Shown here piece after piece: positions 4,128-4,303 of a stretch of DNA of 64,000 nt (the first letter of the stretch is position 1; each line of letters starts with the position of its first letter). The stretch comes from Ascidiella aspersa. Lineage: Eukaryota. A program made the position numbers and the translations under genes. The stretch spans positions 35,774,001-35,838,000 of the forward strand of contig OZ004607.1 in the NCBI GenBank assembly GCA_963924565.1, given 5' to 3'. The notes under the pieces are model-generated. The model did no database searches, was not told the origin of the DNA, and saw only the letters and a program-made list of their open reading frames with translations.

Positions 4128-4303
4128 TGCATATCTTCATCCCGAGTGACGATATCGTATCGTTCTCTGTCGCCACCCAGCGGCTCGACGAGAACACCGG
4201 AGCGCTTCTTTTGCTTGCGTTCCGCCTCGGCGCACACGAGCAGCAATTGTGACGCGACAATCGTAATCCATAGCGTTTTTGTGTTGCGGCGTGAGAGTAA
4301 CAT
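4128..4303 (-). CDS. First coding exon with signal peptide MLLSRRNTKTLWITIVASQLLLVCAEA-ERKQKKRSGVLVEPLGGDRERYDIVTRDEDM; internal ADAMTSL start or next gene
   Basis: ATG with A at -3, basic n-region, hydrophobic core and AEA cleavage motif, GC-rich coding-like composition, donor CA|GTAAGT in phase 2. Confidence 0.65.

What the first reader, a model, noticed from the sequence alone, without database searches (positions are those of the whole stretch)
4128..4303. Internal signal-peptide exon in phase 2: candidate MADD-4B-like C-terminal punctin isoform
Seen: 12.4 kb downstream of the TSR6 exon, on the same strand, lies an exon encoding a clean signal peptide plus a RKQKKR-S convertase-like site, ending in a phase-2 donor. 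The TSR6 exon (16680) also ends in phase 2, so both could splice to the same next TSR exon. I found no such exon inside the window. Established: ADAMTSL1/3 continue with more TSRs, Ig domains and PLAC, and C. elegans madd-4 uses an internal promoter to make a short C-terminal isoform with distinct synapse-organising function. Inference: this locus may encode N-half, C-half and full-length punctins. Caveat: an out-of-frame ATG at 4343 overlaps the exon.
Basis: partly seen in the sequence, partly recalled or inferred. Interest (0 to 1): 0.78.

Follow-up and report, generated by a model that had tools for sequence, protein, structure and literature searches.

The report
Unconfirmed signal-peptide exon in ADAMTSL intron
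A short stretch inside a very long intron of a sea-squirt matrix-protein gene looks like an extra first exon that would make a secreted short form of the protein, but neither RNA reads nor related species yet show that it is used.

Summary
On the minus strand an ATG at 4303 opens 58 codons with a rule-conforming signal peptide. They end at CA|GTAAGT after 4128, in phase 2.

A phase-2 acceptor opens a W-x4-W-x2-C TSR exon at G000:C1:35741889, 32.1 kb left of the window.

The window's N-half and the Ig/TSR C-half downstream form one ADAMTSL1/3-type gene. Clavelina ADAMTS-like 1 X2 aligns colinearly to both halves.

C-half-only gene models do exist in ascidians (Clavelina, Styela, Ciona). They start with a different exon: a long disordered stretch plus a hydrophobic segment ending L/I/V-P-x-R. 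Its homologue here lies at C1:35752919-35751787 and also has a phase-2 donor. None of these models carries anything like the 4303-4128 exon.

For the exon:
- It is unique in the genome.
- Its codon usage is exon-like (top 1% of open windows).
- Its joint features never arose in 1928 block shuffles.

Against it:
- No reads fell on it in the one RNA run sampled.
- No relative's model has it.
- A repeat lies 30 nt upstream of the ATG.

Verdict: a plausible but unproven second internal first exon. An earlier report of this scan on the neighbouring exon already mentioned it.

The parts
4128..4303 (-). Candidate first coding exon: ATG, 58 codons plus 2 nt, phase-2 end. By rule the signal peptide is n-region RR/K, h-region LWITIVASQLLLV, and AEA before the cut.
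   Evidence: Unique in the genome at DNA and protein level. Codon score 0.2748 per codon, GC1/2/3 0.60/0.40/0.62. GC bump of 0.53-0.60 confined to 4100-4299. Pfam: 0 families.
4122..4127 (-). Consensus donor GTAAGT after CA. Its TAA is also the in-frame stop if the donor is not used, giving a 59-aa ORF.
4341..4343 (-). Upstream out-of-frame ATG in weak context. Its 68-codon ORF ends at 4137. It lies inside the repeat.
4333..4647 (.). Low-copy repeat, about 80% identical to C1:10433658-10433920. It contains a 19-nt A/T run at 4425-4443 and ends 30 nt upstream of the ATG.
   Evidence: The contig break and loose end at 4333 in DNA run X1 match the other copy.
3732..3972 (.). Array of 12 copies of a 20-nt unit in the intron, 156 nt downstream of the donor.
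16680..16833 (-). It ends AG|GTGAGT in phase 2. It is homologous to the Clavelina exon that joins the next TSR.
1..4127 (-). The in-window part of the intron that would follow the 4128 donor. Two parts of the system lie outside the window and cannot be given window coordinates. (a) G000:C1:35752919-35751787, 21.1-22.2 kb left of position 1: a 378-codon open frame ending in a hydrophobic segment and ...AIPNR, with donor AG|GTAAGG in phase 2. It is the homologue of the first exon of ascidian C-half models. (b) G000:C1:35741889-35741661, 32.1-32.3 kb left of position 1: the shared TSR exon. Its acceptor ...ccgctag|G leaves 1 nt and then WVLGAWGDCSVTCGRG..., so it is phase-2 compatible with all three donors.
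   Evidence: (a); Pfam 0 families. (b). Intron sequence.

Best explanation
The window's N-half (TSR1, Cys-rich, spacer, TSRs) and the TSR/Ig/TSR exons up to 53 kb left of the window are one ADAMTSL1/3 (punctin)-type gene of an ascidian. It lies on the minus strand. A 48.8-kb intron separates the TSR exon ending at 16680 from the TSR exon starting at C1:35741889.

Inside that intron lie two ATG-capable exons with phase-2 donors. One is a conserved 'hydrophobic-anchor' exon at C1:35752919-35751787. The other is the finding, 4303-4128.

I read 4303-4128 as a genuine alternative first coding exon, probably little used or specific to this lineage. Transcription would start within about 100 nt upstream, or an SL would be trans-spliced there. 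The signal peptide would be cleaved after AEA. The CA|GTAAGT donor would splice over 36.2 kb to the shared TSR exon (CA+G = Gln, then WVLGAW...). The product would be a secreted C-half protein, a counterpart to the anchor-exon form.

Shown: the sequence features, phase compatibility, gene continuity in relatives, and exon-like codon usage. Inferred: transcription, use of the donor, cleavage and secretion.
For: - ORF, signal-peptide pattern and consensus donor.
- Only 7 of 437 ORFs in 124 kb pass the SP rule, and only this one has GTRAGT. The rule passes 38 of 173 real TSR-family N-termini.
- Phase-2 acceptor of the W-x4-W-x2-C TSR exon.
- Codon log-odds 0.2748 per codon. This is reached by 1% of 1744 open 58-codon windows outside known exons and by 0.8% of 3863 GC-matched windows. 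It is reached at 12 of 302 distinct places, at least two of which are real or likely exons. It lies within the range of true exon windows (mean 0.40, sd 0.24; 23% score lower). The other two frames score -0.05 and -0.27.
- GC3 is 0.62 against 0.65 in true exons.
- 0 of 1928 block shuffles gave an SP-like ORF with a phase-2 donor and that codon score.
- The sequence is unique in the genome.
- One gene across both halves: Clavelina XP_076801065.1 gives 10 N-half and 11 C-half HSPs in order (9+11 in the strict chain). Its ...GGGRYQ|WDISPF junction corresponds to 16680 joined to 35741889.
Against: - RNA run X7 (same species label; 7.79 million records, about 6% of the run): 0 reads in every bin from 3328 to 4827. 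Only 4 reads (2 fragments) fell in the 3 kb laid, at about 2920-3320 and 4880-5127. All have the first mate on +, as expected of minus-strand pre-mRNA reading through. The tissue is unknown, and depth on the gene's other exons could not be measured.
- No listed holder of the stretch is on record as RNA.
- None of the ascidian models seen has such an exon. Their C-half forms start with the anchor exon. Models seen: Clavelina X1-X4 and CAK86944xx, Styela X1/X2, Ciona P0048/P0161.
- The word search of the peptide against proteins of 54-171 aa found no candidate.
- A repeat abuts 30 nt upstream, and an upstream out-of-frame ATG lies in it.
- GC-rich patches are common in this intron: 21 clusters in 124 kb.
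- The signal-peptide call rests on a home-made rule, not SignalP.
Confidence: 0.42

Rival explanations
1. The ORF is not a used exon. It is either a chance open frame or the relic of a former exon inside the 48.8-kb intron. The C-half isoform is made only from the conserved anchor exon at C1:35752919-35751787.
For: - 0 RNA reads on it, while intronic reads flank it on both sides.
- It is absent from all relatives' models, which use the anchor exon.
- SP-like ORFs do occur by chance: 6 others in 124 kb and 5.7 per shuffled replicate.
- A phase-2 GTRAG donor always carries an in-frame stop, so an ORF that merely ends in G-TAA-GT looks like a phase-2 exon.
- 12 of 302 open places reach its codon score.
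- A repeat lies at the would-be promoter.
Against: - The joint features were never produced in 1928 block shuffles.
- Codon score, GC3 and the frame contrast are exon-like.
- The GC bump is confined to the ORF.
- One RNA run at 6% sampling is a weak negative.
Confidence: 0.4
2. It belongs to a separate small transcript nested in the intron. This would be a 59-aa secreted peptide if the donor is read through (stop TAA at 4126-4124), or the first exon of an unrelated gene.
For: - The ORF closes at once if unspliced.
- A signal peptide followed by a basic cluster KKR is the usual layout of peptide precursors (general knowledge, recalled).
Against: - No other coding-looking minus-strand ORF lies between 4128 and the anchor exon. 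10 of 10 ORFs tested had no Pfam family. The only place there reaching the codon score is a GC-rich patch that scores on both strands.
- No RNA reads.
- No short protein relative.
Confidence: 0.1
3. It is an internal or terminal exon of the N-half transcript. From the 16680 donor, the acceptor AG at 4355-4354 would give the frame of ATG 4343 and a stop at 4137. That would be a short N-half-only tail. The AG at 4408-4407 would give an in-frame cassette.
For: A T-rich tract precedes the AG at 4354. One in-frame AG exists at 4407 (read).
Against: - The AG at 4407 follows an A-rich, not a pyrimidine-rich, tract.
- A hydrophobic segment inside a secreted TSR protein makes little sense.
- Both acceptors lie in the repeat.
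- No reads.
- Relatives join the TSR exons directly.
Confidence: 0.05

Closest known systems
C. elegans madd-4 (Ce-punctin): long MADD-4L and short MADD-4B from alternative promoters
   Same: [quoted passage not shown] The short form has its own first exon and ATG inside the gene (PMC11385328 and PMC8258370, passages read). Here an ATG exon inside the gene is phase-compatible with the shared exons.
   Different: No transcript evidence here. Homology of the first exons was not tested. Where the nematode short form begins relative to the domains was not checked (figures are not held). This locus has two candidate internal first exons, not one.
Ascidian C-half 'ADAMTS-like protein 1' models: Styela clava XP_039257690 and XP_039257691, Clavelina lepadiformis CAK8694399-401, Ciona UPI0002B8DB2E
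   Same: They start inside the same gene and splice to the same TSR exon...P-x-R|W-x4-(W/F/Y)-x2-C.
   Different: Their first exon codes 175-316 aa of disordered sequence and then a hydrophobic stretch at the exon end. The finding is a 58-codon classical signal-peptide exon with no similarity to them. It lies 26 kb further upstream than this genome's anchor-type exon.
Vertebrate ADAMTSL1 (punctin-1) and ADAMTSL3 (punctin-2); Clavelina ADAMTS-like 1 X1-X3
   Same: Host gene architecture: TSR1, Cys-rich, spacer, TSRs, then TSR/Ig/TSR. Lamprey ADAMTSL1 and kiwi ADAMTSL3 are the best non-tunicate hits of the Ciona C-half.
   Different: No internal signal-peptide first exon is recorded in the models seen. 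The PLAC end was not mapped here.

Membership tests
ADAMTSL1/3 (punctin) type gene (host gene) | N-terminal TSR1, Cys-rich module and ADAMTS spacer | tested here: met
   Colinear tblastn of Clavelina ADAMTS-like 1 X2, which carries PF05986 and PF19236, to window 45112..19037. TSR1 exon read.
ADAMTSL1/3 (punctin) type gene (host gene) | Arrays of ADAMTS-type TSRs | tested here: met
   PF19030 matches at window 22126-22308, 21252-21377 and 19037-19189, and at C1:35741694-888, 35723669-836, 35722703-873 and 35720604-771. One search gave 1.4e-9.
ADAMTSL1/3 (punctin) type gene (host gene) | Ig (I-set) domains in the C-terminal half | tested here: met
   PF07679 at C1:35724477-35724689, 42.5 bits. 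Ig exons align at 53-66% identity to relatives.
ADAMTSL1/3 (punctin) type gene (host gene) | C-terminal PLAC domain; no metalloprotease domain | not tested
   The 3' end beyond C1:35720604 and the 5' end beyond window 45112 were not mapped.
ADAMTSL1/3 (punctin) type gene (host gene) | N-half and C-half on one transcript | tested here: inconclusive
   Phase 2 to phase 2, and the Clavelina RefSeq model joins the homologous exons. No junction read was obtained here (one search covered only 2628-5627).
MADD-4B-type short isoform | Own ATG first exon inside the long isoform's gene, in frame with the shared C-terminal exons | tested here: met
   On paper only: CA|GT donor plus the G|TGG acceptor. 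The exons were not joined in any tool.
MADD-4B-type short isoform | Transcribed from its own promoter and spliced to the shared exons | tested here: inconclusive
   0 reads on 4128-4427 in 6% of one RNA run of unknown tissue. No RNA holder listed.
Cleavable N-terminal signal peptide | Basic n-region, uncharged hydrophobic h-region, small residues at -3 and -1 | tested here: met
   Home-made rule. It passes 1.6% of ORFs and 22% of TSR-family N-termini.
Furin-type proprotein convertase site | R-X-K/R-R before the cut (motif recalled) | tested here: not met
   ERKQKKR|S has Q at P4. Only the looser dibasic KR / P6-R pattern fits, and it would leave a 7-residue propeptide.
Conserved ascidian internal first exon (anchor type) | Long disordered N-terminus, hydrophobic stretch at the exon end, L/I/V-P-x-R before the TSR | tested here: not met
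   The finding's exon has none of these. The ORF at C1:35752919-35751787 does.

The most novel reading that the evidence does not exclude
The ascidian punctin gene makes three protein classes from one locus. These are the full-length matrix protein, a C-half form that starts with a long cytoplasmic-looking tail and a hydrophobic anchor, and a freely secreted C-half form that starts at the 4303-4128 signal-peptide exon. The long/short punctin logic known from nematode synapses would then also operate in the closest invertebrate relatives of vertebrates. It would carry an added switch between tethered and secreted forms, chosen by promoter.
Probability: 0.3. Interest if true: 0.55.

Novelty: new member of a known kind. 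Interest (0 to 1): 0.33.

Why it matters
Punctin/ADAMTSL short and long isoforms decide which receptors cluster at nematode synapses. Whether chordates use the same isoform logic is open.

This locus shows that ascidian ADAMTSL1/3 genes carry a conserved internal first exon for a C-half form. In this species there may be a second, classical signal-peptide exon as well. If both are used, the choice of promoter would decide between a tethered and a secreted organiser. That is testable in a model with a simple larval nervous system.

If the exon is not used, the case is a useful warning. Phase-2 GTRAG donors always carry an in-frame stop, so stray ORFs can mimic exons.

Tried and rejected
- RNA test. 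It gave 0 reads on the exon, no joints and no RNA loose ends. The partner of the donor, and the depth on the gene's other exons, therefore could not be measured.
- Runs X4 (organism B) and X6 (organism C). X4 laid nothing. X6 laid only short low-depth pieces, including the repeat at 4328-4410 and none on the exon. They gave no conservation evidence.
- Representative search with the shared TSR exon. The ranking was dominated by multi-TSR proteins, with no hit above 56% identity. The species' own proteins are apparently not representatives. The hits became useful only after local tblastn.
- Word search with the Ciona C-half. It returned 33 proteins, only 4 of them tunicate. It missed Styela, so its silence about other ascidians means little.
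- Word search of the exon peptide. No candidate, but only proteins of 54-171 aa were eligible.
- Pfam on the exon and on 10 intronic ORFs: nothing.
- Rfam on 94 kb: one borderline tRNA hit, which ARAGORN did not confirm.
- CpG observed/expected is about 1.1 everywhere, so it is no promoter marker.
- Rejected reading: a cassette or terminal exon. The acceptors are poor or out of frame (read).
- Rejected reading: TE-derived ORF. The exon is unique in the genome.
- Rejected reading: splicing of the exon into the anchor ORF. It would put the TSR/Ig domains on the wrong side of a membrane (inference).
- Literature. One search for 'ADAMTSL' with 'ascidian' found 3 papers, none on isoforms (listing; passages of PMC1867822 read). 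This single search does not show that the isoforms are out of print.
- Supplementary files were not asked for. The madd-4 locus figures are not held, only their legends.
All searches were exon by exon.

Full report
**What is there**

The window is G000:C1:35774001-35838000, and the gene runs on the minus strand. ATG 4303 opens 58 codons: MLLSRRNTKTLWITIVASQLLLVCAEAERKQKKRSGVLVEPLGGDRERYDIVTRDEDM. Two more bases, CA, follow, and then GTAAGT.

The TSR exon 12.4 kb upstream ends AG|GTGAGT at 16680, also in phase 2.

The peptide has a basic n-region, a 13-residue uncharged hydrophobic core, and A-E-A before the likely cut. The 'convertase-like' RKQKKR has Q at P4. It is not the canonical furin motif (motif recalled), and it would leave only a 7-residue propeptide. 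I give it no weight.

**The predicted partner exon exists**

I fetched 60 kb left of the window. At C1:35741889 the acceptor ...ttccgctag|G leaves one base and then reads WVLGAWGDCSVTCGRG.... It lies 32.1 kb left of position 1 and 36.2 kb from the 4128 donor.

Further TSR and Ig exons follow, down to C1:35720604.

**One gene, and who the relatives are**

A representative search with the TSR exon followed by local tblastn picked out the true relatives. Cluster look-up names them:
- Clavelina lepadiformis ADAMTS-like protein 1 X2 (XP_076801065.1, 1864 aa)
- Clavelina CAK8694400.1
- Styela clava XP_039257690
- a Ciona protein, 73% identical to F6Z4P1_CIOIN

The genome is therefore an ascidian's.

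The Clavelina full-length model gives 10 HSPs in the window (45112 to 19037) and 11 in the C-half, in order. Its sequence ...CETPSLGGGRYQ|WDISPFTDC... joins the homologues of the 16680 exon and the 35741889 exon. The 48.8 kb between them is thus an intron of one ADAMTSL1/3-type gene. No junction read from this species supports that yet.

**A different, conserved internal first exon**

C-half-only models exist in Clavelina, Styela and Ciona. All begin with 175-316 residues of low-complexity sequence and then a hydrophobic stretch. That stretch ends L/I/V-P-x-R directly before the TSR exon.

This genome has the same thing. A 378-codon open frame at C1:35752919-35751787 ends ...FPGVLVFLVRLSIFLLLFRVAETSDAIPNR, with AG|GTAAGG in phase 2.

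An earlier report of this scan (s1-801633) called that exon an orphan that looks evolutionarily young. Searches show that its architecture and junction are shared by three other ascidian genera, although the sequence is poorly conserved.

None of the models seen contains anything like 4303-4128.

**Is 4303-4128 more than chance?**

Points in its favour:
- It is unique in the genome at DNA and protein level.
- By a crude signal-peptide rule, 7 of 437 ATG-ORFs of at least 40 codons in 124 kb pass. Two of these have a GTRAG donor, and only this one has GTRAGT.
- The same rule passes 38 of 173 Met-started TSR-family proteins.
- A codon log-odds score was trained on 9230 codons from three very long open frames elsewhere in the genome. 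It gives 0.2748 per codon. That is reached by 1% of 1744 open 58-codon windows outside known exons, by 0.8% of 3863 GC-matched windows, and at 12 of 302 distinct places.
- Several of those 12 places are real or likely exons. True exon windows average 0.40 (sd 0.24). The other two frames of the exon score -0.05 and -0.27.
- GC1/2/3 is 0.60/0.40/0.62, against 0.55/0.52/0.65 for true exons.
- The GC bump is confined to 4100-4299.
- In 1928 shuffles of 150-nt blocks, SP-like ORFs with a phase-2 donor averaged 0.176 per 124 kb. None reached the codon score.

Cautions:
- GC-rich patches are frequent in this intron.
- Real non-coding DNA has heavier tails than shuffles.
- A phase-2 GTRAG donor always holds an in-frame stop. 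An ORF that simply ends G-TAA-GT therefore looks like a phase-2 exon.

**Evidence against use**

No listed holder of the stretch is on record as RNA. Run X7 is RNA with the same species label. In it, 7.79 million records were read, about 6% of the run, and only 4 reads landed in 2628-5627. None fell between 3328 and 4827.

The 4 reads form two fragments, at about 2920-3320 and 4880-5127. They carry alleles also seen in the DNA run, so they come from this locus. All have the first mate on +. If the library is of the usual stranded kind, that means minus-strand RNA. Low-level pre-mRNA therefore seems to read through on both sides of the exon while the exon itself shows no enrichment.

This is a weak negative. 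The tissue is unknown and the numbers are tiny. The call was the only one allowed, so the gene's other exons could not be measured.

Other points against:
- A low-copy repeat (4333 to about 4647, 80% identical to a copy at C1:10.43 Mb) ends 30 nt upstream of the ATG. It holds the out-of-frame ATG 4343 in weak context.
- The word search of the peptide found nothing among proteins of 54-171 aa.

**Weighing**

The sequence statistics favour a real coding exon. The comparative and RNA evidence is negative but weak. My estimates:
- about 0.42 that it is a used alternative first exon giving a secreted C-half form
- about 0.40 that it is an unused ORF or a relic
- about 0.10 that it belongs to a nested small transcript
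- about 0.05 that it is another kind of exon of the N-half transcript

**Comparison with the known**

The arrangement works like C. elegans madd-4. There, long and short isoforms come from alternative promoters and share a C-terminal moiety (PMC11385328 and PMC8258370, passages read). Membership in that isoform class needs a transcript, which is lacking.

The exon is not a member of the conserved ascidian anchor-type first exon. The host gene meets the tested ADAMTSL1/3 features. PLAC and the absence of a protease domain were not tested.

**Novelty and score**

If real, this is one more alternative first exon in a gene family where internal first exons are already annotated, so a new member of a known kind. 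Interest is modest at 0.33. It would rise if junction reads showed both a tethered and a secreted C-half form.

All work was exon by exon.

Noticed in passing
G000:C1:35752919-35751787 (21.1-22.2 kb left of the window): The 378-codon 'anchor' ORF has the same architecture and the same L/I/V-P-x-R|W junction as the first exon of C-half models in Clavelina, Styela and Ciona. It is therefore not an orphan. Its nearest in-frame Met is about 165 residues upstream of the hydrophobic stretch. Its GC1/2/3 is flat (0.59/0.56/0.55).
   Followed up: partly
window 7501-9750 and L004:7500-8500 (C1:35771501-35772500): Two unique GC-rich patches (0.54-0.55) in the big intron have long open frames on both strands, no Pfam or Rfam match, and no second copy in the genome. 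Their nature is unknown.
   Followed up: partly
window 17430-17774 (-): An exon with a Ser/Thr-rich, mucin-like run (TTQATSTTTQTSSTTTQTTSTTT) lies before the first half of the last N-half TSR. Clavelina has an acidic D/E/Y-rich linker at the same place.
   Followed up: no
G000:C1:35909605-35918742 (-), 72-81 kb right of the window's end: A cluster of seven PF19030 TSR matches on the same strand. It is probably a neighbouring TSR-rich gene or the 5' part of another ADAMTS(L) gene.
   Followed up: no
L005:3510-3584 (-) = C1:35757510-35757584: A borderline Rfam tRNA match (29.3 bits against a gathering score of 29) that ARAGORN did not call.
   Followed up: yes
window 3732-3972 and 17014-17184: A 20-nt tandem array (12 copies) lies just downstream of the candidate donor. 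A hexamer microsatellite reads as (KVV)n / (LSP)n ORFs.
   Followed up: partly
Clavelina models P0152 (CAK8694397.1) versus P0057 (XP_076801065.1): Two annotations of the same species disagree. One splits the locus into an N-half gene (590 aa, ending by read-through into an intron) and a C-half gene. RefSeq joins them.
   Followed up: partly
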